64,000 nucleotides of DNA, taken from contig CM075982.1 of assembly GCA_038087875.1 (NCBI GenBank), forward strand, positions 19,592,001-19,656,000, in the 5' to 3' direction. How positions within the stretch are numbered: the first letter of the stretch is position 1; each line of letters opens with the position of its first letter. Below are positions 29,804-61,900 of the stretch, one piece after another. This DNA comes from Malacoraja senta. Its lineage: Eukaryota. The translations under genes were made by a program, and so were the position numbers. Under the pieces are notes generated by a model. That model searched no databases, had not been told where the DNA came from, and saw nothing but the letters and a program-made list of their open reading frames with translations.

Positions 29804-30445
29804 GCATTTGTTGGTTCATCAAGATACCATCAAATTGAAAAATTGATGTTGGACTTTTCCCCATGACTTAACAGCATGCAGATTTTCCATTGGTATATAA
29901 TACAGCGTAGAACAATATGCATGGTAATTGTGTGTCATATGCAACAGCCTTAATGTTGATAATGCTTTATATATTTCTGGTGCAGAATAAGAAATTATCT
30001 ATTTAAAAGAGAAACCCAGAAGAAAGCTATTCATCCACCATGCCACATCCTAAAAGTTCACCCAACCGTTCCCCAAAGTCCTGGAAAGTTTATTTTAAAG
30101 AAGGCAATAAGATACTCGAGTTATGATGAAAATGTAAAGCTTCACATAAGTTGCAGAACAGACCACATCCATTCTACATTTGTAGAACAAAAGGCTGCAT
30201 AGCACAGTAGTTAAACACAGAGGCTCGCTGCAAGGTATAACAGCTCCACAAACTTAAGTACTCCTGGTACAGTGTGTGACGTTTGCCCATTCTCCTCTAT
30301 CCACGAGGACTCTCCCAAGGTAGACACAAAAAACTGGAGTAACTCAGCGGGACAGGCAGTGTCTCTGGAGAGAAGGAATGGGTGACGTTTCGGGTCGAGA
30401 CCCTTCTTCAGACCCATTCCTTCTCTCCAGAGATGCTGCCTGTCC
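29804..30445 (-). repeat. Inverted duplication, copy A (partner 59786-60427)
   Basis: 642 bp; coordinates sum to 90231 at both ends; about 4 substitutions seen; the same 68-aa spurious ORF appears in both copies. Confidence 0.93.
30384..30411 (-). ncRNA. Minimal type I hammerhead ribozyme motif with extended stem I
   Basis: Reverse complement CTGAAGAAGGGTCTCGACCCGAAACGTC flanked by complementary arms. Confidence 0.65.
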
Positions 30446-31259
30446 AGCTAAGTTACTCCAGCATTTTGTGTCCATCTTTGGTTTAAACTAGCATCTGCAG
30501 TTACTTCCTACACACAACTACAAAAACAATGCTGGTAGCAGCATCAACGACTTGCTTTAATCTCAGGATGGAGTATCCACCTCCATCAATTCTCTTCACT
30601 TGGCGCTTTCCCTTACAATCATGGTAAAAGCAACATTTGTCATTTCACCTCTTCCCTTCCCATCATCCAGAGATCCAGACAATGTTTACAGTGAAGCAGC
30701 GATTCACTTACATTATTTCCAGCTGTTGTAAGGGAGCAGGTTCAAGGATCTGACTAGTCGAACAGAAAATAGGCACACCCGTCCATTAACCTCGTTGCAC
30801 TTATGTGCAATGACAATAAAAGATATTATTATTATTATTATTAAGTTACAAATCAGATTTATTGGCAAGAGGGAGAACAAAAACAATACATACCTCGGTA
30901 TGCGTGGGGTCCGCCTTACAGCACACCTCCTTCTCTGTCTCCGTCCACGGCGCTGATCTCGACCCAGCCCGTCGGTGAAACCTTCTCATCAAAGAACTAA
31001 CTAACAGCTTACCGGCACCTGACTTTATACCGGCAAAAATCAGCCGTTGAAATAACCGCCGTGAAGTCCTGGCCAATAGCGCCGATTCCAAATTCAAACT
31101 GTAACCAATGGCAAAATAACCTGACTCAAAGAAATCCAAAGGAGATTATTTTTAAAGTATTTCATCCACGATAGTCTTATTAGGATGAGACAAAATTTAT
31201 ACAAAGGTTTTCTTCCAGAATTTCTATCGTTCAATGTCTTTCCAAGTTAGTGGTGTGAC

Positions 31260-31473
31260 TGTGTAAGAAGGAACTGTAGATGCTGGTTTAAACCGAAGAT
31301 AGATACAAAATGCTGGAGTAACTCAGTGGGACAGGCAGCATCTCTGGAGAGAATGAATGGGTGACTGAAGGAGTCTGAAGAAAGGTCTTGACCTGAAATG
31401 TCACCCTTTCCTTCTCTCCAGAGATGCTGTTATCACTCTCCAGAGTTACTCCAGCTTTTTTTTGTCTATCTTT
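31260..31473. mobile_element. Palindromic pLTR mini-element with CpG-decayed hammerhead core
   Basis: Inverted arms around CTGAAGAAAGGTCTTGACCTGAAATGTC. Confidence 0.75.
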
Positions 31474-32302: not shown

Positions 32303-32590
32303 GTTTTAGTTTTAGAGATAGAGCGTAGAAACAGGCCCTTCGGCCCATCGGTGCCACGCCATCCAGCGATCCCCGCATATTAACACTTTCCTACACACAC
32401 GTGGGACAATTTTTACATTTACCAAGCCAATTTACCTACAAACCTGTACGCCTTTGGAGTGCGGGTGGAAACCGAAGATCTTGGCGAAAACCCAGGGGGG
32501 CCACGGGGAGAATGAACAAACTGAACAGACAGCACCTGTAGTCGGGATTGAACCAGGCAGCAACTCTACTGCTGCGCCACCGTGCTGCCC
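32303..32590 (-). mobile_element. tRNA-derived SINE (HE1/V-SINE-like) with CR1-type 3' tail
   Basis: A box TGGCGCAGCAGTAG, B box GGTTCAATCCC, tail GGGCCGAAGGGCCTGTTTC...CTAAACTAAAA. Confidence 0.8.
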
Positions 32591-32834
32591 AATGCATGAA
32601 GGAAAATAATTCACATGGGTTGGGAACACATCTGGAAGTGGGACTAATTGGAGGTGCTAAACACAGAGCAATGGGACGAATGGCCTCTCACCGTCAAGAT
32701 CTGATTCGTAATAGCGATGTCCCTCCAATGCTCAGAGCTCTCACCCAGGTCCATCGTGTTCCAAAGTGACAGCGACAGGGCTAACGTGAAGCGAGCTGGA
32801 AGCTGGCAGAGTGGCACGGGAGGAGACAAAATGT

Positions 32835-34190
32835 GTAGGAAGGAACTACAGATGTTGGTGTACAGCAAAGATAGACACAAAATGCTGCAGTAACAGTGGG
32901 ACAGGCAACATCTCTGAATAGAAGGAATGGATGATGTTTCGGGCCAAGACACTTCTTCCGACTGAGAGTCAGGGGAGAGGGAAACACAGTGATGAAGAAG
33001 GGGAAGGTGTCAAAATGGGACATCAAAAGAGATGGGGATCAAGCAAAATGTAGAATAGATCATTGTTAGCTAGGAGAAGATAACAACAAAACAAACAGAT
33101 TAAATGTAATCAGGGAGACAGTCAGACTGGTTGGAGAACTAGGAAGGGGAAGGCATGGAGAGAGAGAGAGGGGGAAAGCAAGGGTTACTTGAATGTTAGA
33201 GAAGTCAATGTTCATAACGTTGGGGTGTAAGTTGCCCAAACAAAATATTTGGTGCTGTTCCTCCAATTTGCGCTGGGCCTCACTCTGACAATGGAGGTGG
33301 CCCAGGACAGAAAGGTCAGTGTGGGAATGGGAGGGGGAGTTAAAGTGTTTAGCAACCAGAAATCAGGTAGGCTTAGGCGGACAGAGCGGAGGTGTTCAGC
33401 GAAATGATCGCCAAGCCTGTGCTTGGTCTCGCCGATATATAGGAGTCCACACCTGGAACAACGGATACAGTAGATGAAGTTGGAGGAGGTGCAAGTGAAC
33501 CTCTGCCTCACCTGAAAAGACTGTCAGGGTCCTTGGGGTGGAGTCAAGGGGGGAGGTAAAGGGACAGGTGTTGCATCTCCTGCGGTTGCAAGAGAAGGTA
33601 CCTGGGGGGGATGGGGGTTGGGTGGTAAGGGACAAGATAACCAGGGAGTTGTGGATGGAACGGTCTCTGTGGAAGGTGGAAAGGGGTGGAGATGGGAGAA
33701 GAGAGGAAGTCTGAAGAAGGATTTCGGCCCGAAACGTTGCCTATTTCCTTCGCTCCATAGATGCTGCTGCACCCGCTGAGTTTCTCCAGCATTTTTGTGT
33801 ACCTTGGAGATGGGAGATGTGGCTAGTGCTGGGATCCCGTTGGAGGTGGTGAAAATGTCAGAGGATTAAGGGCTGGATGCGACTGCTGATGTGGTGAAAG
33901 GTGAGGCCAAGGGGGACTCTGTCCCTGTTGCGATTGGGGGGAGGGGGAGCAAGAGAGATAGTTTGGGAATAGGGCCAGTGTACGCATGGAACAGGCATTG
34001 CTCGACGTAGCCCATTAGAGAGGCAGGCATATCTGGGGCCCATGTCTGTGACCATGGTTACGCCTTGAATCTGGAGGAAGTGGGAGCAGTCAAAGGTGTT
34101 AAGAGTAAGGACCAGCTCTGCTAGGTGGAGGGGAAATTGGCAGGTTCTGCGATCGGAAAAGAAACGGAGGGCTTTAAGACATTCCTGGTG
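32835..34190 (-). mobile_element. Penelope-like element (RT remnant, GIY-YIG, pLTR) with nested pLTR mini-element (33700-33804)
   Basis: ELVLTLNTF...FLQIQGVTMVTDMGPRYACL (PLE RT motif); FTCTSSNFIYCIRCSRCGLLYIGETKHRLGDHFAEH (GIY-YIG); nested copy bounded by 13-bp TGGAGATGGGAGA repeats. Confidence 0.88.
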
Positions 34191-34231
34191 GTGGCCGCTG
34201 GAGTGAGAGCTGCTCAAGCGAAATTCCGTCA

Positions 34232-34414
34232 TGAAGCGAGCCGGAAGCCGGCAGTGAGGCAAGGGGCCGTCGTGAAGCGAGCCGGAAGCCGGCAGTGAGG
34301 CAAGGGGCCGTCGTGAAGCGAGCCGGAAGCCGGCAGTGAGGCAAGGGGCCGTCGTGAAGCGAGCCGGAAGCCGGCAGTGAGGCAAGGGGCCGTCGTGGAG
34401 GAGCCGGAAGCGGG
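34232..34414 (+). repeat. 41-bp GC-rich tandem repeat (4 perfect copies plus 1 diverged partial) with ETS/GABP cores, ZZEF1 promoter/5' UTR
   Basis: Unit TGAAGCGAGCCGGAAGCCGGCAGTGAGGCAAGGGGCCGTCG at 34232, 34273, 34314, 34355; partial copy at 34396. Confidence 0.93.
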
Positions 34415-34536
34415 TAGCGGACTGCAGCTGCAGGGGGACCTGTGGGTGGGTGGGCGGCAGTCTCGGCGCCGCGGATTCAGGGGGGGACCCGGCTCAGTGA
34501 TCGGTGAAAGGCCGGGGGAAGAGAGGCCAGGCCGGG

Positions 34537-34947
34537 ATGGGCAACGTCGACAGCGTCGGGGCGGAGCAGCCCGACTGCGCCGAGGAGGAGGACGAGGAGG
34601 AAGAGGACGAGCTGGGCCCGGACACTGAACGTGGCCCCGCCAAGGCCGGCTTCCCGGCACCGGGCGGGGGCCCGGAGGCAGCGGATGGAGGCCACGTCCC
34701 GGGCCCCAGCCCCGGGTTGAGCCTGCGGTGCGGGCCCAGCCCCGACGCCCTGTTCCAGCACCAGCGGCTGCGGGAGGCGGCGGCCAAGGTGCGGGACGAG
34801 GTGGCGGAGAACGTGGTGCAACAACACCACAGCCACTTGATCCGCTGGCTGGAGGAGCGCCTGGCCCGCGGCGACGAGACCGTCCGGCTGGCGCAGTTCT
34901 GCGACCTGCTCGCCACCCGTTTCGCCGTCAAGGAGGAATGCGAGGAG
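34537..34947 (+). CDS. ZZEF1: ZZEF1 exon 1 (MGNVDS...EECEE)
   Basis: gccgggATGG Kozak context; GAG|gtgaga donor. Confidence 0.92.
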
Positions 34948-37900
34948 GTGAGAGAGGCGGTGGATGTGGTCGGGCGGGCGGGCGGAGATCCGGGATCGGA
35001 GGGAGTTTCGATGTGGGATGCAGAGGGATGATGGTTCCGGGGGGGGGGGGGGGGGCAGCGATCAGGATTGAAACTGGGGAGTGGAGGGGTGCGGGGAGCC
35101 AGGAGTGGAGACCAGGCGGGGGAGAGTGGAGGGGATGGGGACCCTGGGGGTGGGGGTGTTTTCTGAGGGTCGGCGTTAGGGGACGAGGTGGAATGGAGGG
35201 GGTCTGGAGTGAGTCAGGCGGGTTGAGTGGAGGAGACATGGGGTCCGGGTGAGGGCTGGGATGGAGTGGAGGGAGGTACACAAAAATGCTGGAGAAACTC
35301 AGCGGGTGCAGCAGCATCTATGGAGAGTCCGGTGAGTCAGGAGTGGGTAGGTCAGGCGTGTTAAACCGAGGAGGGGGAGGGGGGATGATTCCACTGACAG
35401 TGGTCTAGGTGTTATCCTCCCGGTACTGACACCCGCCGCATGGGTGAATCGCGGGCAGCGGAGCCGCTCCCCCGTGAGTGGTTTAAGGAACTCTACGGAG
35501 TAAATTTGGAAAACACTCTTGTTTCAATGCGCGGTTATCGTTCGAAGAAAAGATTAGTTAAATATATTGGACAGTTGGAAGGTTATTTCAAAATTTAGAA
35601 GAGCAGATTTAATAATTTATACTTGGTAGGATGTAATCGAATGCCATCAAAATCTGTTTTAACCTAGTTTGTCAGAATGATTAATAGTAAACTGCACGCC
35701 GAGTTTTGGGAATGTATTTACACTAGCTCTTTTGGGATAATTGAGCAGGTCTACAGGGACATCTCTAACCCACACTGTCCCAAGCTGCCCAAACCTATTG
35801 CCCCCGCCTGAGTACAAGCCAGTCTCTGACAGCAGGTGTCAATAGCAATAATAGCCTTTGATAGGCTACTGAGACCTTGTTTACTAAGCTGCGGTTAAAG
35901 GAATGCTGTTGAAGGAATACAACGATTATTGCATTTGTTGGTCTGGAAAGGGAAAACCAAAGTCTGTTTTATTTAATTGGCAAAACACTGTAAAGACTGG
36001 ATTAAGATTTCCCTTCCTAATGTGAATTTTGAAATACATGCCACCTCTGGTAATAGTGTAGAACACAAAGTGCTGGAGCAACTCAGAGGACATGGATCGG
36101 TGATGTGAATAGCTCTCTGGTACTAGCTCTTAGTCACCTCTGCTAATATCTGACTCATTTTGTTTGCCAGCACTCTTCTGTGGCATCACAGATGACTTGT
36201 CATACCAAAGGAGCTACATGATATAACTAAATTCTTGCTATTGAGAATTCCTGGGGATGGCGGGACTGACATATGATGAAAGAGTGGGTCGACTGGGCTT
36301 GTATTCACTGGAATTTAGGAGAGAGGGGATCTTATAGAAACATATACATTCTTAAGGGATTGGACAGGCTAGATGCAGGAAAAATGTTCCAGATGTTGTG
36401 GGATTCCAGAACCAGGAGTCACAGTTTAAGAATAAGGGGTAGGCCATTTAGGACTGAGATGAGGAAAAACTTTTTCACCCAGAGAGTTTTGAATCTGTGG
36501 AATTATCTGCCACAGAGGGAAGTGGAGGCCAATTCACTGGATGTTTCAAGAGAGAGTTAGACATAGCTCTCAGGGCTAGTGGAATCAAGGGATATGGGGA
36601 AAAAGCAGGAACAGGGTACTGATTTTGGATGATCAGCCATGATCATATTGATTGGTGGTGCTGGCTCAAAGGGCCTAATGGCCTACTCCTGCACCTATTT
36701 TCTATGTTTCTATGAAATGCCAAATGCTGCAATTTTATTTTGCATTGTACACATTAAATTTCTTAGCCTGCAATTAATTAAACGAAATAGTTAAGATGTT
36801 ATGGTAATCTGGAAATGTCTAAATGGTTTTGTGAAAGGTAACTTATGTTTGATTAATTTACTGCAGATTATCTGTTTTGTGGTAATGGGGAACTGGAGGA
36901 TTCCTGTATTTGATCTCCAGAAGGCATTTGATAGCTCCTTGTCAATCAGATGGCAGATGGAGATTATTGTTGATGGGTTGCCAGGCTAACTGTTGATGAT
37001 AAACACATTGCAAATGTAATGCTTGGGCCTTCGATTTTCGTAATTTATGCAAAATAACTTGGACAAAGGTATCGAAGACGGTTGCTAAATTTGCTGATGG
37101 CACGACTCAGTAGGGAAATAAGTTGCAGTGGACGTAAAGAGGCTACCAAAGAGAGAGAGAGAGGGTAAATGTGTGGGCAGCAATCTAGCAAATGGGTCCC
37201 CAAGTGGGAAGGTATGAAATTGCCCTTTTTGACATTTTAATTAAAAAAATGTTATCTAAATAGTGAGAGATTGCAGAGGGACTTGTCCCGGAATACGATT
37301 TGCAAAAACAAACAATGAGTTACTTGGTGCTTCTGAGTAATGTGGCAAGTAATTGGGAAATTTTAACAATAACGTTACTAAAGGAATAGAAGCTAGGTTA
37401 TACACCAGTTGTTTAAAGACATTAAAGAAACCATATATGGAGGATTATACAGACTGTACAGTAATGGTCACCTTATGTAAGGAAGGTTGTTAGTGGGTTG
37501 GAAGCACATCAGAGAAGTTTCTCAGACAAATGTCTGAAATTGGAAGGCAGTCTGATAAGGAAAGGTTGGACGGGCTAGGCTTGTATCAACTGAGAATAGC
37601 CACACAAAGTTGGAGTAGCTCGGGGTCAGGCGACATCTCTGGAGAAAAGGAATAGGTGACGTTTTGGGTCGAGGCCCCTCTTCAGACTGAGAGACTGGTG
37701 AAAGGGAAACGAGAGATATAGAAAGTAAATAGAATAAATGAATGAAAGATATGCAAAAGGCAATGATGATCAAGCGAAGGTGAACAATGGTCCATTGTTG
37801 GCTGTAGGGTAGGTGATAACGAGTTAAACAGACAGTGAAACTCAACAGGACAACAGTGAAACTAGCACGACGACAAGGGTGGAGGTTTAGAAGCGTGAAA

Positions 37901-40900
37901 AAGGAACAATTGAAACAGAAGTTCCTGACCGGTCATTTTGAGAATATTTATTTTTATGGGTAAATCTAAAGCGAGTGATCGCTGTTTTATAAAATAAATA
38001 AGGCATTGCCTGTTTAAAGCAGATGAGACAAGAAAAATCTCTTCTAGCTTTGAGTCTAGAAAGTTCTCTTCCTCAAAGGGAAGTGGAAGCAGAGTGTTCT
38101 AATATTTTTAAGGCCAAAGTGTACTTGGTAAGCAAGAGGGTGAGAGTCGAGGTTACAAGTAGAACCGCCATGATCTCAAACTGTCAGAGCAGGTCCATGG
38201 AACTGAAGAACCACTACAGTTTCAATTTTATTGTCAAGACTGCTCATATTTAATTCTGTAATGTGTATTGTCTGAGGGAACAATTCGTGTGGCAGACACA
38301 CATAAATGAAAGTGCAGGACAGCTGCAACAGGTTGGGGACATCTGTGGAAAAGCCCAGTCAACAAATTAGGACCAGAATGGGCCACTCTGGCCCTTGAGT
38401 CTGCTCTGTCCTTTAATAAGATCGTGGCCGTTCTAATACTATATTCAACTCTGCATTTCAGTCCTTTAATCCCTTGCTTACCAAGTATCCATTTACCTTA
38501 GCTTGAAAGAGCTTTGCTACCTCTGCTCTTTGGGGAAGATAGTTCCAAAGACTAACAGGAGGAATCAACTCATCTCTGTCTTAAAAGGGCCACCTGTTAT
38601 TTATAAACAGGGACCCCTATTTTTAGGTTTTTCCTGAAGGGGAAAATACCCTCCCCACATCCACCCGGTCAAAATCTCTTGCGTTATTGAGTCTGCAGCA
38701 TTAACTTCTTGGTTCATGTGATTCACTTACTCCCGTTGATCCATAAATCTTGTTGCCGTTTTCTTTCTCACTTTTACTTATGAAAACTTGCTGACATCAA
38801 GAGGTGTAAATGAGCTGTGGGTAGAAATATAGAAGTGCAAGGGTGAAATGCCTTCTGACAAGTTTTGGATGTCTTAAGGTGATGACGAACAGAGCTTGTG
38901 TTTGGAGTAAAGTTCATGAGGCACTGATCTCATCTCAGAGTGACTGACCAGGGATTGCACCAGGCTGTTCTGTTGTGCTGATGAAGCCAATGCATCTGGA
39001 TGAGTCATTCATTCACTCTAACCAGATTGAAGTTTTGCTTGAAGTTCTGCGGGACTTTGATCAGGCCCTTTGCAGTTGATCACAATGAGAAAGATTAAAA
39101 GTTCGCAGCTTTTGTGATAATAGCGAACTCCTGAAATTGTCAGTGATCGATGGACTGTAAATGGAATTTCCTACCAATACAGACTCAAAGTGCTGTAGTA
39201 ACTCAGCAGCTCAGACAGCATCTCTGGAGTCTCTACCAGTATGTTTTCATTTATCCTGGTGACAACTCATTGATCAGCCTTGGTTGTCCTCTGATAGGAA
39301 CTTGCCTCAGGCCTGTGGAAACTGAGTTCTGTTCTTTGCTTTCGGAAGGTATTGAAAATTAACCGTAAAGTGAATCCATTTTTTATTGGAGCTTGCAAAA
39401 GCTAAGAATCAAGCTCATTGGGGAAAAAAATTAAAATGATCAATACCTTTCTTTTGACCTGCATATATCTATCACTTTTTTTACCAGGCTAATGTAATGT
39501 GTCAACACCAGGCACTGCTCCCTAAATTAATCAGATCGTCCCATCCTGCCAATATTTAACTTCCTTGTGTTGCTATAAAATATTACTCAGTACTATATAC
39601 AATCTACTCCGGTGTGTACTCTGGAATGGTACGATGTGGATTTGGGATTTGACCTTTGGGTTTCCAAATCTGGCTGTGCTCTTAAATAGAGTTGTGAGGA
39701 AAGGAGCATGATCTCTGCCACGTATTGCGAGACAAAAGACTTGATCTGTCAGACTTGCAAATCAGACAGAAAGGAAACAAAAGTTTGTTTAAAAAAAATG
39801 CTCAAACAAATGTTTTTATTCCCTAATTCAAGTGCAGCACTTGAGCATTAAACACTCTCTAATTCAGCTAGGAGCTGTGACTAGAAAGTTCCTGTAATTT
39901 AAGATGCTAGTGGATCAATAGTGATTGTACAACAGCTTTTGTCTTGCAGACGCACTATGAATCACATAGAAATATTTGGTGAAACATAGCTGAAAGCTCT
40001 ACCAAGAAATCAAAGAACCGTTCATGGGATTTTGTACAATCTTGACATTAGTCTTCATCTTTTCTGTACCTGAAATTGCTCAGGTTAAGTCTGCATTGTA
40101 CAGGAATTCAATGATAGCTTGACTTAATGTGGGAATCCAGCCAACGAGTGTTGCCAAACAGATTCCCATGGGAGGTAAACCTTGCACAAATTGCTGGTGT
40201 TGTTGTCTTGCCCAATGATGACAACCATTTTTCAATGCCAATTTTTAATAAATGGAAAAAAAAAGTAAAAGGGCTTGGTAGCTATTCAACAGTCTTCAGG
40301 AAAAGCTAACCAACCATCGTGGTGCAGAAGGACAGTTCAGCTGCAGTAATCCTCCATCTGCCCTTGATTCGTTTAAGAAAGGACTGCAGATGCTGGAAAA
40401 ATCGAAGGTAGACAAAAATGCTGGAGAAACTCAGTGGGTGAGGCAACTCCATAGATGCTGCCTCACCCGCTGAGTTTCTCCAGCATTTTTGTCTGCCCTT
40501 GATTCAACAGTTTATCTTTCCCCTACAGACGTCGTCTTTCAGTTTGAGCTCTGTGCTAAAACATTTCTCCCAGTTCTGAATCTGTGTAAGAAATGTATTC
40601 TGACAGCCGGTCCTCATGCACTCTCATCATTCTCCAACCGGAAAGGCCTTTCCTCATTCATCCCATTATTGGACAGCATAGCACAGTGGTACTGCTGCTC
40701 CTCCAGACACTCAGGTTCGATCCTGACATCGGGTGCTGTCTGTGTGGGATGTATCTGCTTGGGTTTCTTCCGGGTGCTCAGCTTTCTCCCATGACCCAAA
40801 GAGGTGCGGGTTGGTGGGTGCATTGGCTGCTGTAAATTGCTCCAGTGCGAAGATGAGGATAGGATCTGCAGGGTATTTAGAATGTGGGGAGAACAAATAG

Positions 40901-49900: not shown

Positions 49901-52900
49901 AGTGGGACGGGCCCTTTAAGCTTCACATTCCAGCATTCTCGTGTGTCTCCAGTAATTTAAACAATGCAGCGACCCCTCACTGCTGTATGGGAGTAGTATT
50001 TGGTTTGCCCTCAAGTCTTTGGAGCGAGACTCATTAAAGCAGGACTAACGTCTCAGTACTACATTTCTGCTTTTCTGTATCTGGCTTTAACACTAATGTA
50101 TTAGATATTGTGTGAAGAAGATGCCACCTTTTGTAAAACGAGGTGTATTGTTGAGTGAATATTTATCTCTATCCTGATAGTAATTGAAACATGATGCTTT
50201 CTTCAATCTTTTCATATGCAACCTTGGGAATACCTTGCTGTAATTGCCTTTTTTCTTTCTCGCAGGCATTTGCTCAGTTTGATGCGGAAGGAGATGGTAC
50301 AGTTGCTGTGGAAAACATGTTGGAGTCATTGAAAACCTCTGGTGGAGCTAATCTGCGGGGAGAATTGAGTCACGTGATTCGACAACTCCAGGGATGCTCC
50401 CTTACTCCAGGTAGCAGGAGCCTGATTAATGTATTGCAAAAAATATAAACTGCTGGATTTTCTGATAATTATTAATTTAGAACTAACATTTTCTTAACAT
50501 TGTTGGCTCTGTATCATAAAGTTAGTAGCCCTTCTGTTTCTTGAACTAATAATTGTGTTATATCTTTACCCCTGTTCCTGAGGGATTGGTCTCTGAATGT
50601 TGGATCAAGGCCAAAGCTGATCCATCCTCAGTTACCTGCATGCCATCAAAGATGATGTGAAAACCTTGGCTGGTATATGTCCTCTAGTCCCAGCTAAGTT
50701 AAATAAATCCAGACATACTTGCAAACCAACCTGAAGTGGGAGTGGATCTGAAATTAGACACTGTCATCTTTAAATATGAAGAAGAATATGAACCCCTGGG
50801 TGTCAGGAGTTATGGGGAGAAGGCAGGGGAATTGGGTTGAGAGGGAACGATAGACCAACTATGATTGAATGGTGGTGTAGACTTGATGGGCCAAATGGCC
50901 TAATTCTGCTCCTATCACTTATGAACATGAAATATGTGCCATGGTTTTCCACATTGCGTCACCGTCTTTTACTACTGCTACAAGCAGGCTGCGAAAGGTC
51001 ATCGACCTGAAATGTTAACTCTTTTCTTTCTTCATAGATGCAACTATATCTCTTGAGTTCTCTGGCATTTAGTATTTTTATTTTGTGCTCCCATGTCTTT
51101 GAGCTGCTGTATTGTTTAAAGATTGGTCTCTGGAGAATTCTTCCCTTTTGAACTAATCACAAAGCTGTGGGTCTACATAGAGTATCTTCTCGAGTAGTTT
51201 AGTGTTGGGCATTTAAGCTCAGTTACTAGTTCAACTTGGCTGCACCCTGACGTGTCTTTTGTGCTTATCACATGTGCTTTACGTGGAGTCTCAGCATATG
51301 CAAGCATGAACATTTCTTGATCATTTTGGGGCACCCTGGGAAGGATTGGTTTTCCGAGGTGATAACATCAGTGTTCTGACTAATGGTCACATTGGGTAAG
51401 GATGTTAAATCTTGCTGCATGTTCAATGAATACCATTTATTCTACCCTATTTGGTCTTCAGGTTCCATCAGTAAGACAATGTTGTGTTATAGATACCAAT
51501 TTTAAATAGCAAATGTGTGCTATCTGGCCTGCATGCAATTAATGCTGCAACAACACAATACATGTTTGAGCTGCTATCTAAACTGAATAACAAGGCAGCT
51601 GAGAGATGGTACATATTTGTTTGCATAGTCACTGGACTCCAATTATTATATTTTGTAATTGTAAACAAAGAGCTGACTGGAAAGTTGATTGACTAAATTG
51701 AGAGGATCAAATGGCATTTAAAAGAATCCAAACCGATTCAGTCTATCTACCAGGTTGATTCTTCTGAGCAGTTCAGGCATGGGGATTATATACAAGGAAA
51801 GATTGAGTAGAATTGGTCTACTCTCATTCGGTTTTTCCAGGCATATGAGAAATTGGATACTGAAAATACATTCTCCCAGGTCTAGATTAGAAGTGGAATT
51901 AGAACTTTTTGGGGGTAGAGTTTGTTAGATCTTTGAAATTCTCTACTTTGAATTGTTCAATTGCTAAATGTACTTGCATCTGTAAGGAAGGATGGCCCTG
52001 CATTGGAGAGAGAGCAGAGAGATTCACTTGTGTGAGAAAGAACTACAGATGCTGGTTTAAATCAAAGGTAAATTCGCAAGAGAGATTCACTTGATGGATT
52101 TCTAGAATAAACGGGTAAACATATGGGAAAAAAACAGAAACCCATTTTCATTGAACTGTGGAACAATGATGGGTGATCTTATTGAAACATAAAATTGTAA
52201 GGGTGATTCATAGAGTGGACGCCGAGAGAATATTTACCTTTCCGGGAAGTAGGGGGATTAGTTTGAGAATAAAAGGCCATCAAGGAAGAATTGGAGGACT
52301 TCCATCTCTTAGAAGGTCGTGCCTTTGCAATTCCCTACCCAGAAAGCTGTGGAGGTGGAATAATTGAGTATATACAAGACAAAAATTGACAAGTATTTAA
52401 TGAGAATTAATTGAGGGATATGGGGAGACCGTGGGAAAGTGGTGTTGCTGCCAAGTTTGGGTCAGCATAATCTTGTTGAATGGTGGAGCAGGTTCGAGGG
52501 GTCAACTGGTTTACACTTGCTCCTGTTATAAGTTGGAGACAATATTTTGAGCCATAAGGAAATCCAGAGATATGGGGTTGGCCAGGAAGGTGTATTCCAG
52601 TACATTCAAATCTTGAATGACAAAGATGGGTGGAGTTACTATTACCTGTTCTTGTTTCTTTGTTCTTAATCGTGCAAACCTTTTAAAAAAAAATATTTTT
52701 GCTGCTGGGAATTGTGCCACACTTGTTCTAAAACCCTCTCTGTTGAATAATTGATGCAGCTAATTTTATTTGCGCATCACTATGTACTTTTTTGCCAAAT
52801 TAAAAGTTGGTATTAGCATGTATTCATTTTTCCCCTTTTCTCCTAGGATTTGTTGACATCTTTTCAAAAAATAAGGAACGCATGGGTGTTCACGCTGCCA

Positions 52901-55900
52901 AAATCTTGCGTTTCCTCCACAGGAACAGAATTCCAAGCAATGCTATCCCTTTCCCCATGATGGACAGTTATAATAACATTTGTGCCATGCGTTCCTCCGT
53001 TTTGAAGGATAGCCTGAAGCAGTTGTTAGAGCAAAAGAATGGTAAGATGTTGGATCTTCAAGTGGAAATGTATAATATACAGTGGCTTGCAAAAGTTTTC
53101 ATACCCCTTGAACTTTTCCACATTTTGTCACGTTACAACCACAAATGTAAATGTATTTTATTGGGATTTTATGTGAAAGACCAACACAAAGTGGTGCATA
53201 ATTGTGAAGTGGAAGGAAAATGATACATGGTTTTCAAATTTTTTTACAAATAAAAAACTGAAAAGTGTCGTGTGCAAAAGTATTCAGCCCCCCTGAGTCA
53301 ATACTTTGTAGAACCACCTTTCGCTGCAATTACAGCTGCAAGTCTTTTGGGGTATGTCTCTACCAGCTTTGCACATCTAGAGACTGAAATTTTTGCCCAT
53401 TCTTCTTTGCAAAATAGCTCAAGCTCAGTCAGATTGGATGGAGAGCGTCTGTGAACAGCAATTTTCAAGTCTTGCCAGAGATTCTCAATTGGATTTAGGT
53501 CTGGACTTTGACTGGGCCATTTTAACACGTGAATATGCTTTGATCTAAACCATTCCATTGTAGCTCTGGCTGTATGTTTAGGGTCGTTGTCCTGCTGGAA
53601 GGTGAACCTCCGCCCCAGTCTCGTCTTTTGCAGACTCCAACAGGTTTTCTTCCAAGATTGCCCTGTATTTGGCTCCATCCATCTTCCGATCAACTCTGAC
53701 CAGCTTCCCTGTCCCTGCTGAAGAAAAGCATCCCCACAGCATGATGCTGCCACCACCATGTTTCACAGTGGGGATGGTGTGTTCATGGTGATGTGCAGTG
53801 TTAGGTTTCCGCCACACATAGCGTTTTGCATTTAGGCCAAAAACTTCAATTTTGGTCTCATCTGACCAGAGCACCTTACTCCACATGTTTGCTGTGTCCC
53901 CCACATGGCTTGTGGCAAACTGCAAACGGGACTTCTTATGGCTTTTTTTCAACAATGGCTTTCTTCTTGCCACTCTTCCATAAAGGCCCGATTTGTGGAG
54001 TGCACGACTAATAGTTGTCCTGTGGACAGATTCTCCCACCTGAGCTGTGGATCTCTGCAGCTCCTCCAGAGTTACCATGGGCCTCTTGGCTGCTTCTCTG
54101 ATCAATGCTCTCCTTGCCCGGCCTGTCAGTTTAGGTGGACGGCCATGTCTTGGTAGGTTTGCAGTTGTGCCATACTCTTTCCATTTTCGGATGATGGATT
54201 GAACAGTGCTCCGTGAGATGTTCAAAGCTTGGGATATTTGTTTATAACCTAACCCTGCTTTAAACTTCTCCACAACTTTATCCCTGACCTGTCTGGTGTG
54301 TTCCTTGGGCTTCATGATGCTGTTTGTTCACTAATGTTCTCTAACAAACCTCTGAGGCCTTCACAGAACAGCTGTATTTATATTGAGATTAGATTACACA
54401 CAAGTGGACTCTATTTACTAATTAGGTGACTTTTGAAGTCAATTGGTTGCACTGGATTTTATTTAGGGGTATCAGAATAAAGGGGGCTGAATACTTTTGC
54501 ACGCGACACTTTTTTCAGTTTTTTATTTGTAAAAAAAATTGAAAACCATGTATCATTTTCCTTCCACTTCACAATTATGCGCCACTTTGTGTGGGTCTAT
54601 CACTTAAAATCCCAATAAAATACATTTACGTTTGTGGTTGTAACGTGACAAAATGTGGAAAAGTTCAAGGGGTATGAATACTTTTGCAAGCCACTGTAAA
54701 TATCCATATATCTCTAAGATGATGTTGAAATGCACAGTTATCTTGATTTTAAAAAAAAGAAGCAATTGTGATGTTTTGAATTTAATGAAGAAACTCATAG
54801 GGATAAAATATGTCTTGAGCATTTCCATGCTTTAGTGTACTTTAGAGAATACCAGGGTTCTGGTTCTATGATTATTGGAAATTCACCGCTTTCCTTAGTT
54901 TACATTAACTCTATTGACTGCACATTTGTGTGCTGATCATGTTCAGTCTCACAAAAGAAGAGCTCAACACTCCAGTTTTATCTATACAGAAAAGTCTAGA
55001 TTCCAAGTAAATCTGTCAGAGTTCTGAACCTGACCATTTTCTTCTGGATGCAGCGAATATGCCGATGGTTTGGCACCACTTTTAACCCTTACTGGATCAA
55101 GTTTGTATTTTTTTTAATCCATTCGTACGATATTGAACTTACTTACATGACCAAAATTTATTCCCGTACCAGATTTTTCTTAAAGATGATGCAGAACATC
55201 AACCATGATCTACTGTAGCGAGCTTGTTAAAAGCAATACAACAGCAGAGCACTATGGGCTGGGCAGCTTCAGGACGTTGCTCCAGCGATGATGAGAAAGG
55301 AATGCTAGCATTTGTCAGGGTTATATGTGACTTCCAGGAAGGTGTTGGTGTCTCCCAGACCCTGCTGCATCCTCCTAGTTGACAGAAGTTGCCGTTTGAA
55401 AGGTGTTGGCTTAGTTGCTGTAGTGAATCTTGCAAGTGATTCATATTGCACTGGAGGAAGATAGGTTGTTTTGATGGTTATGTTTAGGTAATGACGCCGT
55501 CAGCTTTGCCACCATTTACAGAGCAGCATTTGGATCATCGCTTTATCCACATAATATTCTCTGAAATTTAGAATAAGAATATGCAGCCGTTCAGATGCTT
55601 ATTCTGGACAAAATTAATCCTAAACAAATTGCTTGATTCAAATGGGAAAACTGCATGTTCTAATTAATACCAGGCATTCCAAAACATTGTGAATAACCAT
55701 TTTCAATAATTGTGATATAGTAACAGAACGTGAAAAATTATGCCTTTTCCAATAGAAAATGTTTGCAATGTGTTTGAGGTTTTTTTCTTTTCCAAACCAT
55801 GCGATCGCCTTTAACAGCTGAAGCCAAATCACTGACAAGAAATTGAGGATTTAGTCAGATTTGAGAGTCTTGTGGTTAGTTGATTACAGAAAATGGTTGT

Positions 55901-58900
55901 TTCTCTACAATTTATTGACAACCAATTAGTATTGTTTTTGTATTTTTTCCACATGAAATTGATTACAGAACAATTAATGTTAGATAGGAATAATGTAGTA
56001 AACAGACAAGTTAAAAATCTTCATGGTCCAATGAAAACTGGTGATATTAAATTAAATCAATGTAGAGAAAGAATAGCCTGCATTTATATTGCAACAGAAA
56101 TGTACTTGAAAATGTTGTAGAGAAAATTCACCTGAATGTACTGTGGTTTAATGAATTAATTTGCATGGATTGTATGCAAAATTGGCTTGCTTATCCTTAA
56201 GATTGGAAGTTTGAACGGTTGAAGGCTCTTCTTCTGTGCAACATAATCTGAGCAACATAATCTAGAAACACGCTCTTTCTGAAAATTGGGACCGTTTGAC
56301 TTGCTGAGGGTAGTATACATTGGAAAATCTCTTCTATGCAGTTGGTTATATATTTAATTTTAATTGATTACATTTTGCAAACGGTGGGTATTTAGGGGGA
56401 AAGCTGGTGTGTGGTTATATCACTGATTAGCCATATAATGTTTTTGATGTTTTTGTCGCTAGGATGGGGGACTTGAGGACCTAGTATGTCTGGGTTTATT
56501 TAACTTCAAAAAGAGAACTCAACCATTTGAAGGGTAACAGAAGTGTAGAATTTTGTTTTTAATAGCTATGAATGAAAGGAGTCTTGAAGACCAGTTTGGT
56601 AGATCTTTGTTTTGCAAAGATGTCGTTAGCTGAGAAAGTATGGTTGAGTGGAGCTAACCTGTAGATCACTGATGATCTAATTAAAAAACAATGCATTTGC
56701 AGACTGAATGGCTTATTGTGTTCATTTATTGTATAAATTAACATGTAATTGCTAACAGTGTCATGTGGTAGCTCAGTTTAGTCATCTTGGTCATCTCAGC
56801 TCCTTTTCTAGTTGGATAGCAACCTTTTCTTACTAGGTGAAAGTGATGCATTGCTCTGAAGGCTGTAGACACACCGTCTGGTATGAGTCTGGTATGAAAA
56901 GGGAAGGTTGGTAACTGTTTTGCATCTTGAACAGTATAGTTAGCCAATCTATTCATCTAAATCATGTTTAAATTGAATGACTTGGCTAGCTATGTAGCGA
57001 AACATTTACCAACCTTAATGTTCCATGTAAGAGAGTATATCTGGACCCTTTGCTAATTCTATTTATAAAATTAGTTGTATTTAAATTGACAACTTGGCAC
57101 TCTGCATAGGACATCTGGCTCAGAAAAGAGAAACAGCTGGCGGTTGCAACAATTCATTCCAAATGCACCATGAAATACTTGCTGTGAGTCATTTAAAAAA
57201 AATGTCATGCTATGCTGGAATTCAAGGGAAAGCCAAGCCAAATCTTGAATGAAAATGTCATAAGCAGTATTTAATTGGCTGGTTGTTTAATTGGTGTGGT
57301 ATCATCATTTTATTATCGTATTTCTTAATTTCTCACAGAACAAACAATTCAATGTCCCACAGATATGACTGGTGTAAGAGAGTTGGATAAGCTGAAAGTA
57401 GTAAACAAATGCTACATCACCTTGGATGCTTCTTCAAACTCAACTGATGTTGACAAGATGACCAATGGAAAAACTACTTCCTACTGGCAGTCAGATGGCA
57501 GTTCATGCTCGCACTGGATCAGGTGAATGGACTGATGGTGACAAACATGTTTGTAGAAAAGAAAAGTTAATTCTAAAAATGGGTGTAGTTCAAACCACTG
57601 ACAATAGATTGTACCATTTGACAATAGATAATGATTTATAAAGATAAAGTATTATTTTAAGCAAAACATAAATTAATCACCCAGCTTAATTATGGACAAA
57701 GTGCTGGAACATATCACAGGTGGACAGGGCAGTGAAGGCTTTTGACATCGAAGGAAGACACAAAATGCTAGAGTAACTCAGTGAGACATTAACCTGTTAG
57801 AGGTCAGGCTACATCTCTGGAGAGAAGGAATGGGTGATGTTTTGGGTCGAGACCCTTGTTCAGACTGATTCAGGTGGAATCACGGAGGGGGATCAGTGAG
57901 AGAGGATGTTGCTGAACTCTCGTCGGAGAGAGGTGGAGAATCTTCAAAGTAATACCTTGAGGAGATTTCGCAGTAGAGCAGACAAAATGTGCAGGAAAGA
58001 ACTGCAGATGCTGGTTTAAAATCGAAGGTAGACACAAAATGCTAGAGTAACTCAGCAGGACAGGCAGCATCTCTGGAGAGAAGGAATGGGTGACATTTTG
58101 GGTCAAGACCCTCTTGGTATGCTGGCCTATATCAGTAAGGGCATTATAGAAGTTGGGATGTTATGTTGCAGTTGCACATGACATTGGTGAGGTCACACTT
58201 GGGAGTATTGGGTTCAGTTTCGGTCACCCATCTATAGGAAAGATGCCATTAAGCTGGAAAAAGTGCAGAAAAGATTTATCATGATGTTGCAAGGACTTGG
58301 ATTAAGTTGTGGGGAGGGATTGGCCTAGCTTGAACTTTATTATTTGGGGTATACAGAAGTATATAAAATCATGAGGGGCATTGATAGGAGGAAGGAAGTA
58401 TCCTTTTTCCAGGATTGGTGAATGGTATTGATTTAAGATGAAATGGGAAAGATTTAATAGGAACCTGAGGTGCAACGTTTTCTACACAGTGGTGGCTATA
58501 CGGAACGAGCTGCCAGTGGAAGTGATTGAGGCAGCTACAATAATAGGACATTAGGACAGGTCCATGGATAGGAAAGGTTTAGAAGGATGTGGGTCAGACA
58601 CAGGTTAATGGGATTAGAGTAAATGGGCATCTTAGTCAGCATAGATTAGTTGAGCCAAAGGGCCCTTTTCCATGCTGTTTGACTCTATGACTCTGGGTGC
58701 TCATTCGGTCAGGCACCATCTGTGGAAACAAAGTCAATGGTTTAAATTGAAGATCCTATGACAGGTAGTTTACCTCCATCTTTACTGCATCACCTTTCAG
58801 ATTTTTCTTGCCCACGTTGAGCTTTGAAGTTAAGGGGTTTTGTTTATTTTAGAGATACGGCGTGGAAGGCCCTTTGGCACACCAAGTCCACGTGCACGTG

Positions 58901-61900
58901 CACTACTGTAAATGTTTTTTTATTGTCTGTCCTTTGAAAGAAATGCATATGGACGAGTGAAATGTTCTTTTCTTTTGCAGGTTACGTTTAAAACCTGATG
59001 TTGTGCTGAAGCACGTTTCAATAGCAGTGTCAGCTAGTGATCAAAGTTACATGCCACAGCAGGTGACTGTGTCGTTGGGGAGGAATTCTGGTAACATGCA
59101 TGAAGTCCGTGATATTCGTATTCCCAGTAATATGACTGGATACATTACACTGCTGGAAAACGCAAGCATCATCCACCCATGTAATTGTACAGTTTTTTGT
59201 TTCTTGTCAGATATTATCTACTATCTGTTTATTCTTACCTTACATCAAATAAGCACTTAATTGATCTGAGATTGCTCCAGGTCACGTTTCTCATATTGTT
59301 GTGAAATCTAAGTATTAGTATCAATACAATAAATAGAAACTACATTAAAGCCTTAATCCCCATGATTAACATGAGAATATATGATTTTCTTTTTAAACAA
59401 TGAAAATCTTAACTCCTTTAGTTTGACTGTGTTATTTCAAACACAGTTATTTTGCAGGAAAAAGGAATATTTTGGAATTGATTAAGTAATACATTAATTT
59501 TCATATTTCCGTATAACACAGGACAATAAATTCTTGGCGTCCATGCTGGCACTAAAAGCAGTCCCTCCAATCTTAACGCCCCACTTATTTTTCCGTTCCT
59601 GCTCTCTAAATACCAGCCTGGGATTCTCCTGTCAGACACATGGGGAAACTTACAGATAACCAAACTGCCAGGGTCTGTGGGATATGGGAAGAAACTAGAC
59701 TGTCCAGGGAGAGCCCTGTGTAAGAAGGAACTGCAGATGCTGGTTTAAACCGAAGATAGACACAAAAAGCTGGAGTAACTCAACGGGACAGGCAGCATCT
59801 CTGGAGAGAAGGAATGGGTCTGAAGAAGGGTCTCGACCCGAAACGTCACCCATTCCTTCTCTCCAGAGACACTGCCTGTCCCGCTGAGTTACTCCAGTTT
59901 TTTGTGTCTACCTTGGGAGAGTCCTCGTGGATAGAGGAGAATGGGCAAACGTCACACACTGTACCAGGTGTACTTAAGTTTGTGGAGCTGTTATACCTTG
60001 CAGCGAGCCTCTGTGTTTAACTACTGTGCTATGCAGCCTTTTGTTCTACAAATGTAGAATGGATGTGGTCTGTTCTGCAACTTATGTGAAGCTTTACATT
60101 TTCATCATAACTCGAGTATCTTATTGCCTTCTTTAAAAAAAACTTTCCAGGACTTTGGGGAACGGTTGGGTGAACTTTTAGGATGTGGCATGGTGGTTGA
60201 ATAGCTTTCTTCTGGGTTTCTCTTTTAAATAGATAATTTCTTATTCTGCACCAGAAATATATAAAGCATTATCAACATTAAGGCTGTTGCATATGACACA
60301 CAATTACCATGCATATTGTTCTCCGCTGTATTATATACCAATGGAAAATCTGCATGCTGTTAAGTCATGGGGAAAAGTCCAACATCAATTTTTCAATTTG
60401 ATGGTATCTTGATGAACCAACAAATGCACTTTTATAAAACATTTTGGCTGCTTTTTTTGTAGCAACTTAAAATTCTGTTTTTATATAGATGCTTTATACC
60501 TGTGCCTTTTAGCTCAAAGCTCAAGATACATTTCAGTGACATCTTGACTTTGTGAATGTTTGCATTTATAGGATCTTAGCGAGCTATCTACATCAAAGAC
60601 TTGACATTATATCCTGTATCTTTAAGATGCAAGGTTTTTATTACATGTTCTACTTAACCATAACAATAAGTGGATTCTGGGCATCTAGCTATTGAAAGAA
60701 TGTCATTAAGCTGGAAAGAATGCAGGAAAGGTTCACTAGGATGATACTGGATTAGAGGGTTTCAATTATATGGAGAAACTGAGGCAGTTTTCCCTGGAAT
60801 GTAGGGCATTGAGGGATGACCATATAAATCATGAAGGGCTTAGATAAGGTCAGTGGTCATAGGATAGGAGATTCTAAAACTAGAGAGTATAGATTTAAAA
60901 TGGGAGGAAAAAGATTTAGAGGATCTGAGTGCAACCTTTTCCACATGGTGATGTGTATATGGAACGAGCTGCTAGAGGAAATAGTAGAGGCGGGTACAAT
61001 TACAATGTTTAAAAGACATTTGGATAGATAAATGGAAAGAAAAGGCTTTGAGCATGTCGGGCCAAATGCGAGCAAAGGGAATTAGTTGAGCTTTCGGGTC
61101 AGCGTGGACAAATGAGGCCAAAAGGCCTAGTTCTGTTCTAGATAACTCTGACTGTAGTGACTGCTCAGGAAGATTAGTAAAGCTCATGATCTGCTCAGGA
61201 AGATTAGGAAACTTCTATATGTGCAGTTGTTTGAATGGTAAGAAAACTAATTTGTTTTCAGCAATTTGCTTTTATTAAAACAAGTTATTGTCTCCCCGTT
61301 GAAACTTCAAGTGTGTTTTCATGAAACTTGGGACTAAGCTTATCAAAGGACATTTTTAAGTAATTTTTTTATTTATAGAAATGTGATTATTGATAATGTA
61401 TTGGTCCTTTGCATATGTACTCATTAATATGAATCACCGTGTTGAATGACAGGGCTTAGATTTTGTAAGCTGTCTTCGGATAACTAAATATTTAAGTAGA
61501 ATTATGATCAAATATTGTTAACTTTCGGCTGAAAATTCCAATGTTTCAGTTCTGAGCTCAGAGTATAGGTTAATCAAATCTTCGTGTTCCAAAACATTTG
61601 TTCCAATTTCTGCCTCGGTGCACTATCCATACTCCTTCGGTGGCAATTTGAATTTTCCAAAATTGTACTTTATAGTTATGTCACTGATTCACATGGGTAA
61701 AGTCCTTTTGCATTCATGCATCCCAAATTATCCAACTTTCCTAGCTTTCCTTGCTCCTAGAATCACACTCCTTAACCTTTCAGGATTTAGCTTTTGACCT
61801 TTCTCAAACCTGTTAGATACCTGTTAGATTTCTGTCTTCGAATGATTGAACAAAGCTTGCGTTTCTGCCTTTAGCAGTGCTTCTAAAGTCATCAATCCTT

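What the first reader, a model, noticed from the sequence alone, without database searches (positions are those of the whole stretch)
29804..60427. 642-bp, about 99% identical inverted duplication 29 kb apart, with readable donor and acceptor
Seen: 29804-30445 is the reverse complement of 59786-60427 with about 4 substitutions and no net indel; about 510 bp is ordinary non-pLTR sequence. At copy B the pLTR element has its own TSD and interrupts a continuous older SINE, so B looks original. At copy A the segment sits between the left arm and core (about 29718-29792) and a more diverged right arm (30446-30513) of a resident pLTR element, and high identity stops inside the shared arm. Inference: a recent homology-primed templated insertion (gene conversion, SDSA or an RT template switch on ZZEF1 pre-mRNA). 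The pair brackets the ZZEF1 promoter and exons 1-5, so recombination between the copies would invert and disrupt the gene.
Basis: partly seen in the sequence, partly recalled or inferred. Interest (0 to 1): 0.72.

Follow-up and report, generated by a model that had tools for sequence, protein, structure and literature searches.

The report
Inverted patch copied between Penelope repeats
A 642-base piece of ZZEF1 intron 5 in a skate genome has recently been copied, flipped, into a related repeat 29 kb away just upstream of the gene; this looks like an ordinary DNA-repair accident, it is unusually easy to read, and independent reads do not yet confirm the new copy.

Summary
29804-30514 is the reverse complement of 59717-60427, with no indel. 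The first 642 nt have 4 mismatches and the last 69 nt have 9 (Fisher p = 2e-7).

The "pLTR element" is a fold-back tail fragment of a Penelope-like retroelement with a minimal hammerhead core. The 510 bp beside it is non-repeat DNA at single-copy depth.

Copy B lies in ZZEF1 intron 5 and is the donor. Its hairpin arms match each other better than A's do. Copy A lies between a CYB5D2-like first exon and ZZEF1 exon 1. It splits a resident Penelope fold-back whose two halves flank the insert. A shares B's derived bases up to 30445 and none after.

Best reading (0.58): a break in the resident fold-back was repaired from the inverted homologous repeat at B. About 610-640 nt were copied, and the other end was joined without homology.

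An RNA/reverse-transcriptase route fits less well.

Caveat: short-read contigs confirm B in two samples. No listed contig bridges A's junction, and depth over the 510 bp in the 30x sample is single-copy. Copy A may therefore be private, polymorphic or misassembled.

The kind of event is known, and interest is modest.

The parts
29719..29803 (+). Left half of the resident (acceptor) Penelope-type fold-back. It comprises the outer arm (29719-29763), a minimal hammerhead-type core (29765-29792) and about 11 nt that look like the degenerate start of the right arm (29793-29803).
   Evidence: blastn to family copies. Core pattern match at 29765-29792. A 66-nt contig from another species matches 29725-29790 with 1 mismatch, so the arm-core fusion is a family form.
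29804..30313 (-). Copy A of 510 bp of non-repeat DNA, the reverse complement of 59918-60427 in ZZEF1 intron 5.
   Evidence: 99.2% identical to B with 4 transversions. No third copy in the window. Word depth about 33 in run X20 against 25-34 in unique flanks. Only runs of one organism hold its 31-mers.
30314..30445 (+). Donor-derived part of the fold-back in copy A: left arm (30321-30383), core in reverse orientation (30384-30411) and inner right arm (30412-30445). The last 34 nt equal the family consensus, so the crossover lies anywhere between 30411 and 30446.
   Evidence: 0 mismatches to B. It shares 4 derived states of B's left arm against the consensus of 12 other copies.
30446..30514 (+). 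Right half of the resident fold-back: outer right arm (30446-30476) and a 38-nt Penelope 'tail' (30477-30514). It is not derived from B.
   Evidence: 9 of 69 mismatches to B against 4 of 642 before it, Fisher p = 2.4e-7. 6 states are private to A and 3 to B, and none of B's are shared.
59717..59917 (-). Donor fold-back at copy B: tail (59717-59754), right arm, hammerhead-type core (59820-59847 on +) and left arm. It forms a near-perfect 66-bp hairpin.
   Evidence: DNA fold -75.1 kcal/mol, z = -16, against -67 kcal/mol for A's chimeric version. Core pattern match.
59918..60427 (+). Donor copy of the 510 bp in ZZEF1 intron 5, between coding exon 5 (58973-59179) and exon 6 (62784 onward).
   Evidence: tblastn of a 3023-aa ZZEF1 homologue. 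Contigs of runs X20 and X21 run from this segment for 586-589 nt into sequence that is not A's flank.
34000..59179 (+). ZZEF1 CpG-island promoter (about 34.0-35.5 kb) and coding exons 1-5, enclosed by the inverted pair.
   Evidence: CpG o/e 0.84-0.92 at GC 63-74%. Exon hits at 34735-34947, 50263-50412, 52846-53061, 57347-57523 and 58973-59179. A named ZZEF1 cluster is among the homologues. EF-hand and APC10/DOC Pfam hits.

Best explanation
Copy A is a recent DNA-templated patch. I infer that a break arose inside a resident Penelope-type fold-back about 4 kb upstream of ZZEF1 exon 1. The right-hand broken end lay in the fold-back's right arm. It paired with the homologous arm of another fold-back lying inverted 29 kb away in ZZEF1 intron 5.

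DNA synthesis then copied the donor's loop, its left arm and 510 nt of its unique flank. The new strand left the donor and was joined to the other broken end with no homology (0-1 nt). This is one-sided invasion or synthesis-dependent strand annealing finished by end joining. Equivalently, it is a two-step replicative template switch. The donor is unchanged.

Shown here: the chimeric ancestry, the B-to-A direction, the split resident repeat and the blunt left junction. Inferred: the break, its cause (possibly the hairpin itself) and the enzymes involved.

The result is a 642-nt inverted repeat, 99.4% identical, around the ZZEF1 promoter and exons 1-5. Such a pair could in principle mediate an inversion that would break the gene.
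For: Ancestry switch. There are 4/642 against 9/69 mismatches, p = 2.4e-7. A carries all 4 derived states of B's left arm and none of B's 3 derived states in the last 69 nt, which instead hold 6 private states.

Direction. B's hairpin is the better matched one (-75.1 against -67 kcal/mol; by eye 2 against 5 mismatches in the outer 31 bp). B's far flank is unique DNA reached by contigs in two samples. A's left neighbour is a family repeat cut at a non-canonical point, and the missing remainder (arm end plus tail) sits on the other side of the insert in the right order and orientation.

Not a transposable element. The 510 bp is at single-copy word depth and is held only by runs of one organism.

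Left junction. It is blunt, and the sequences outside it are unrelated.

Precedent. Inverted-repeat-initiated template switching resolved by MMBIR or NHEJ, also between inverted Alu elements (PMC11293582). Templated insertions by MMBIR (PMC8421209). One-sided invasion and SDSA (PMC4888836).
Against: No independent read evidence for copy A. No listed contig bridges 29803/29804. In the 30x sample X20 the contig covering the 510 bp has depth 26.4, the same as single-copy flanks, where two copies predict about 40.

That contig carries three of A's letters and one of B's. This can be read as a mosaic of two copies, or as a B haplotype from which A was copied.

The empty acceptor allele was not seen. 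All four A/B differences are transversions, which is unexplained. The sequence alone cannot separate a DNA template from an RNA template.
Confidence: 0.58

Rival explanations
1. Copy A is an assembly artefact. In this reading, sequence of the B locus (perhaps its other haplotype) was wrongly placed into a repeat-rich site through shared Penelope repeats.
For: Depth over the 510 bp in X20 equals single-copy flanks. No listed contig bridges A's left junction. X20's B-locus contig differs from copy A at only one of 508 positions, which lies inside a T run.
Against: The left junction lies in non-homologous sequence, so a repeat-guided misjoin is not expected there. An artefact would need two junctions inside an otherwise continuous contig. 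There are no N runs in the window. Logan contigs drop variants and break at repeats, so absence proves little, as the tool's own caveat says.
Confidence: 0.15
2. The patch was RNA-templated. A reverse transcriptase (Penelope-like or other) copied a transcript of the B region (ZZEF1 pre-mRNA or an antisense read-through). One junction was made by annealing or template switching in the shared arm.
For: B lies in a transcribed intron. The repeats are Penelope-derived, and Penelope enzymes extend both target strands and insert into their own sequences (PMC11167929). Earlier notes of this scan (s1-140793, s1-187622; unchecked) report other inverted flank duplications at such repeats.
Against: There is no target-site duplication around 29804-30514. 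The 3' 69 nt with the tail are not donor-derived, so at least one extra template switch is needed. On the pre-mRNA, synthesis would have to begin 510 nt downstream of the repeat. That is not near the tail, where the Penelope enzyme is reported to initiate (PMC11167929). The tract includes the core and the arm upstream of the putative hammerhead cleavage site, so a self-cleaved RNA was not the template.
Confidence: 0.12
3. The 510 bp plus fold-back is a low-copy composite mobile unit (an unrecognised TE, or a 5' transduction by the Penelope fragment) that landed at A by ordinary transposition.
For: The segment ends in a retroelement tail, and such tails are very abundant here.
Against: Depth is at single-copy level. 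Only one organism's runs hold the 510 bp. There is no target duplication. The tail end has a different ancestry from the rest.
Confidence: 0.05
4. The pair is the footprint of an inversion made by staggered breaks, or A is the older copy and B the derived one.
For: Inverted duplications at the two ends of a segment are the classical footprint of staggered-break inversions (established knowledge).
Against: ZZEF1 exons 1-5 inside the pair have the same orientation and order as exons 6-7 outside it, so the segment is not inverted. B's hairpin arms are the better-matched pair, and A's outer arm is foreign to its fold-back.
Confidence: 0.03

Closest known systems
One-sided invasion / SDSA with end-joining resolution (ectopic gene conversion that captures donor flank)
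   Same: One junction lies inside pre-existing homology between donor and acceptor. The other junction has no homology. The donor is left intact. The copied tract of a few hundred nt runs from the homology into the donor's unique flank.
   Different: This is a natural germline event in a cartilaginous fish, anchored on about 100-nt Penelope-tail repeats with at most 34 nt of perfect match. It is not an induced break with engineered homology. The break itself and the empty site were not observed.
Inverted-repeat-initiated two-template-switch rearrangements (DUP-TRP/INV-DUP; BIR then MMBIR/NHEJ; PMC11293582)
   Same: The first switch uses intrachromosomal inverted repeats, including short interspersed ones. 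Synthesis proceeds in the reverse direction. The second junction is made by microhomology or end joining.
   Different: The scale differs: a 0.64-kb patch returned to within about 35 nt of the break, with no large duplication or triplication. Homology is tens of nt rather than kilobases.
Penelope-like element tail insertions (minimal hammerhead pLTR, optional 30-40-nt tail, inverted partner copy; PMC4209133, PMC11167929)
   Same: Both the donor and the acceptor repeats are of this kind. They have a CUGANGA...GAAA core, a long stem I, and a 38-nt tail present in some copies only. Weak GIY-YIG remnants occur in longer copies.
   Different: The duplication itself does not look like a Penelope insertion. 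It has no target duplication, its 3' end is chimeric, and it contains 510 nt of host intron.
L1/SVA-type flank transduction
   Same: Unique flank travels together with a retroelement fragment.
   Different: The retroelement end of copy A is not the donor's, and there are no insertion hallmarks.

Membership tests
Homology-anchored templated insertion (SDSA / one-sided invasion / template switch) | Near-identical donor and acceptor tracts, with the donor locus intact | tested here: met
   638 of 642 positions are identical with no indel. B with its own flank is seen in contigs of two samples.
Homology-anchored templated insertion (SDSA / one-sided invasion / template switch) | One junction inside a sequence shared beforehand by donor and acceptor, seen as a switch of ancestry | tested here: met
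   4/642 against 9/69 mismatches, p = 2.4e-7. Derived states are shared before 30446 and none after.
Homology-anchored templated insertion (SDSA / one-sided invasion / template switch) | Second junction with no or minimal homology | tested here: met
   At 29803/29804 against 60428/60427 the flanks are unrelated, with 0-1 nt of shared sequence.
Homology-anchored templated insertion (SDSA / one-sided invasion / template switch) | An empty acceptor allele (intact resident repeat) exists in other individuals or species | tested here: inconclusive
   Repeats break the short-read contigs. Depth in X20 suggests one copy, but no empty-site contig is listed.
Penelope-like element pLTR/tail repeat | Minimal hammerhead core (CUGANGA, helix II, GAAA, cleavage triplet) next to a long stem I | tested here: met
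   12 cores in the window match the pattern, with 0 expected by chance. The stem of the fold-back folds at z = -16. The motif class is described in PMC4209133.
Penelope-like element pLTR/tail repeat | Match to curated hammerhead RNA families | tested here: not met
   No Rfam hit at gathering score in the window. Only hairpin-driven miRNA noise appears at E up to 10. Minimal Penelope hammerheads lack helix III, so this does not bear on membership.
Penelope-like element pLTR/tail repeat | Optional 30-40-nt tail at one end of copies | tested here: met
   A conserved 38-nt extension is present in 6-8 copies and absent in others. The feature is described in PMC11167929.
Penelope-like element pLTR/tail repeat | Association with RT/GIY-YIG coding sequence | tested here: inconclusive
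   An ORF in a longer copy gives GIY-YIG at E = 0.003, below Pfam's cut-off.
Retrotransposition with flank transduction | Target-site duplication and a donor-derived 3' end | tested here: not met
   The flanks of 29804-30514 are unrelated. The last 69 nt are not from B.
Multi-copy transposable element | Many genomic copies of the 510 bp | tested here: not met
   Word depth is 33-35 against 25-34 in unique flanks, while the repeats reach 10^5-10^7. Only two runs of one organism hold the words. A whole-genome BLAST was not possible.
Staggered-break inversion footprint | Enclosed segment inverted relative to the rest of the gene | tested here: not met
   Exons 1-5 and exons 6-7 are collinear on the + strand.

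The most novel reading that the evidence does not exclude
Penelope fold-back palindromes in this skate genome may be recurrent break sites. Repair from other, inverted copies tens of kb away would then repeatedly drag unique host flank into new places. That would be a repeat-driven flank-shuffling process able to seed inversion-prone repeat pairs around genes. The hint comes from two unchecked notes of similar events elsewhere in the genome (s1-187622, s1-140793).
Probability: 0.15. Interest if true: 0.55.

Novelty: new member of a known kind. Interest (0 to 1): 0.3.

Why it matters
If copy A is real, both junctions, the donor and the split acceptor of a natural vertebrate germline repair event can be read to the base. 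The event shows that about 100-nt Penelope-tail repeats, present in enormous numbers in skates, suffice to anchor ectopic copying over 29 kb. It also leaves a young inverted repeat pair around the ZZEF1 promoter and first five exons, which is a possible substrate for a gene-breaking inversion. If such events recur at these hairpins, the repeats would be a measurable source of small structural variation in cartilaginous-fish genomes. As a single event it is an instance of known repair biology.

Tried and rejected
- Rfam at gathering score on the window and at E up to 10 on 29600-30600 gave no hammerhead family, only hairpin-driven miRNA noise.
- SINE continuity across B's fold-back was tested against the one clear SINE copy in the window (32310-32600). 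The left part is significant and the right part is not, so this argument for B as the original is weak. I replaced it with hairpin matching and the split-resident argument.
- I searched for homology between the outer flanks of A and B, to see whether a later insertion at A had interrupted a longer duplication. There was none.
- I looked for other young long repeats in the window. Only the terminal repeats of a Tc1-like transposon turned up.
- The look-up of encoding contigs on three small ORFs (A junction side, shared part, B flank), tried as a way to fetch other assemblies, found nothing on record.
- Staggered-break inversion was rejected on exon collinearity.
- Template from a self-cleaved hammerhead RNA was rejected because the tract includes the core and the upstream arm.
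- The read tools are exhausted (one read-laying run and two run searches), so A's junctions could not be re-examined.
Full report
**Observation**

The repeat finder reports one long inverted pair: 29804-30514 against 59717-60427, 711 nt, 98% complementary, 29202 nt apart. The alignment has no gap inside the pair and loses all similarity outside it on both sides. There are 13 mismatches. Four fall in the first 642 nt (29908, 30034, 30092, 30262; all transversions). Nine fall in the last 69 nt (30446-30514). The contrast is significant (Fisher p = 2.4e-7).

**What the repeat part is**

30314-30514, and its partner 59717-59917, belong to a family with about 20 copies in the window. The fold-back form consists of:
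- a 63-nt left arm;
- a 28-nt core;
- a 65-nt right arm complementary to the left one;
- a 38-nt tail.

Many copies are single-armed: core, arm and tail only. On one strand the core reads as a minimal hammerhead (CTGAAGA, a GGGTC..GACCC hairpin, GAAAYGTC). Twelve such cores occur in the window against none expected by chance.

Minimal hammerheads with a vestigial helix III in the terminal repeats of Penelope-like elements are described in PMC4209133. They are mostly found as dispersed truncated copies, sometimes in pairs on opposite strands. The optional 30-40-nt tail is described as a Penelope signature in PMC11167929. Longer copies in the window (28832-29700, 32862-33696, 3587-4218) carry ORFs with a weak GIY-YIG match (E = 0.003, below Pfam's cut-off).

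Rfam's hammerhead models do not match. That is expected for this stripped-down form. Earlier notes of this scan on other parts of the genome say the same (s1-187587, s1-200023, s1-200024). Here they served only as leads.

**What the other 510 bp is**

29804-30313 has no third copy in the window. Among indexed public runs, only two runs of one organism (X20 with 0.92 of the sampled words, X21 with 0.73) hold it. Runs of eight other organisms hold only the repeat words of the wider stretch. In X20, whose unique flanks have word depth 25-34, the two bins inside the 510 bp have depth 34.5 and 32.6. The repeats reach 10^5 to 10^7.

**Gene context**

- A 71-aa ORF at 62781-62996 finds 39 homologues. 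These include a 3023-aa protein (76% identical) and a snail protein named ZZEF1 by its source.
- tblastn of the first 700 residues of the 3023-aa protein places coding exons on the + strand at 34735-34947, 50263-50412, 52846-53061, 57347-57523 and 58973-59179. After copy B come 62784-63257 and 63705-63896.
- Pfam gives weak EF-hand hits for exon 2 and an APC10/DOC hit for exon 5.
- A CpG island covers 34.0-35.5 kb.
- Copy B therefore lies in intron 5.
- Copy A lies about 4 kb upstream of exon 1. On its other side is a minus-strand first exon with a cytochrome-b5 domain (27942-28277; E = 1.4e-4). From my knowledge of the human locus this looks like CYB5D2 arranged head to head with ZZEF1.
- The pair does bracket the promoter and exons 1-5.

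**Which copy is the original**

The direct repeat around B's fold-back is about 10-11 of 14 identical, read by eye. Against the one clear SINE in the window, B's left flank is significantly similar (z = 4.4). The right flank is not (z = 1.5), although the best alignment does run collinearly across the insertion point.

Three other arguments are stronger:

1. **Ancestry.** I compared both copies with the majority state of the other copies in the window. A shares all four derived states of B's left arm and has no difference from B up to 30445. In the last 69 nt A has none of B's three derived states and six private ones. A's fold-back is therefore chimeric.
2. **Hairpin matching.** B's arms fit each other better than A's do: -75.1 against -67 kcal/mol as single-stranded DNA. 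By eye the outer 31 bp has two mismatches in B and five in A.
3. **A split resident repeat.** Immediately left of the insert lies an outer arm plus a hammerhead-sense core plus about 11 nt (29719-29803). Immediately right of the donor-derived tract lies the rest of a right arm plus its tail (30446-30514). The two pieces are in the order and orientation of one resident fold-back. The arm-core fusion on the left is a genuine family form: a 66-nt contig from another species matches 29725-29790 with one mismatch.

Together these show that a resident repeat at A was split by sequence copied from B.

**Junctions**

The left junction (29803/29804 against 60428/60427) is blunt, and the neighbouring bases are unrelated. 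A heptamer, CATTTGT, occurs 8 nt before the junction and again at bases 2-8 of the insert. The junction does not lie in it.

The right junction is hidden in homology. 30412-30445 equals the family consensus. The crossover can therefore lie anywhere from the end of the core (30411) to 30446, which gives up to 34 nt of perfect match within 103 nt at 91% identity.

**Mechanism**

The simplest route involves a break in the resident fold-back within about 12 nt of its core.
1. The right-hand end invades, or anneals to, the homologous arm at B.
2. Synthesis runs through B's core and left arm and 510 nt of B's flank.
3. The new strand is released.
4. It is joined to the left-hand end without homology.

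This is one-sided invasion or SDSA with end joining (reviewed in PMC4888836). It is also a miniature of the two-template-switch events that start in intrachromosomal inverted repeats, including inverted Alus, and are closed by MMBIR or NHEJ (PMC11293582; templated insertions in PMC8421209). The break, and any role of the hairpin in causing it, are inferred and not shown.

An RNA-templated route is possible but needs more steps:
- There is no target duplication.
- The tail end is not the donor's.
- On the pre-mRNA the start of synthesis would lie 510 nt beyond the repeat. The Penelope enzyme is reported to initiate at fixed sites near the tail (PMC11167929).
- The tract includes sequence upstream of the putative ribozyme cleavage site.

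A staggered-break inversion is excluded because the enclosed exons are collinear with the exons outside.

**Is copy A real?**

This is the weak point. Only assembler contigs of short-read runs were available, and only one laying call was allowed.

- **X20 (about 30x).** A 1098-nt contig covers 29804-30311 and continues for 586 nt into sequence unlike A's left flank, so it comes from the B locus. Its depth is 26.4, the same as unique flanks, whereas two copies would give about 40. At the four variable sites it has three of A's letters and one of B's.
- **X21 (low coverage).** A 1132-nt contig of the same shape carries all four of B's letters.
- **Position 30092.** A short extra contig with A's letter at 30092 occurs in both samples. 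A contig covering about 30035-30133 also occurs in another species' run.
- **A's left junction.** No listed contig bridges it. It abuts a high-copy repeat where contigs break, and the tool warns that contigs show presence, not absence.

Two readings remain:
- X20 lacks copy A and carries a B haplotype almost identical to A. A would then be a very recent, polymorphic copy, or an artefact.
- X20 has both copies, and the contig is a mosaic left by bubble popping. The measured depth does not fit this reading.

A misassembly would need two junctions inside a gap-free contig, one of them in non-homologous DNA. I rate it at about 0.15.

**Novelty and verdict**

The kind of event is known. What is new is the instance and its anchor, a pair of Penelope-tail repeats in a skate. 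Two unchecked notes of this scan (s1-187622, s1-140793) report other inverted flank duplications at such hairpins. If these hold, a recurrent process would be more interesting than this single case.

The mechanism is narrowed to a DNA-templated patch at about 0.58. Independent confirmation of copy A is missing.

Noticed in passing
window 53075-54701: A Tc1/mariner-type DNA transposon sits in ZZEF1 intron 3. It has 190-nt terminal inverted repeats, 96% complementary (53075-53264 / 54512-54701). Two minus-strand ORFs (53578-54315 and 53298-53759) match the Sleeping-Beauty-type HTH, Tc3 transposase and DDE_3 domains. The reading frame is split in two.
   Followed up: partly
window 27942-28277 (-), with later exon-like ORFs at 24431-24709 and 23415-23699 (-): A first exon with a cytochrome-b5 domain (weak Pfam hit) lies in its own CpG island (27.5-28.5 kb), head to head with ZZEF1. 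It looks like CYB5D2, as at the human locus (from memory). Copy A lies in the roughly 6-kb spacer between the two divergent promoters.
   Followed up: partly
window 28832-29700, 32862-33696, 3587-4218: Three old copies (72-75% alike) of a longer Penelope-like 3' part carry remnants of a GIY-YIG endonuclease ORF. The copy at 32862-33810 has a single-armed hammerhead unit (33709-33807) that appears inserted into its body between a short direct repeat (GGAGATGGGAGA).
   Followed up: partly
window 29908, 30034, 30092, 30262: All four differences between copies A and B in the 642-nt tract are transversions, whereas five of the nine differences in the adjoining 69 nt are transitions. In run X20 the B-locus contig carries A's letter at three of the four sites.
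   Followed up: partly
window about 30035-30133: A run of a different organism (X1) lays roughly 100 nt here at its own single-copy depth and at 95% identity or more, although it holds almost none of the rest of the 510 bp. Runs X20 and X21 also have an extra short contig here. This may be a conserved or paralogous piece inside the otherwise unique segment.
   Followed up: no
window 4809-5132 and 8878-9159 (+): ORFs with ankyrin-repeat-like translations lie upstream of the CYB5D2-like gene. They would fit ANKFY1 by synteny with human (from memory). This was not tested.
   Followed up: no
window 17250-18250: A third CpG island (GC up to 66%, CpG o/e 1.1-1.3) has no gene assigned here.
   Followed up: no
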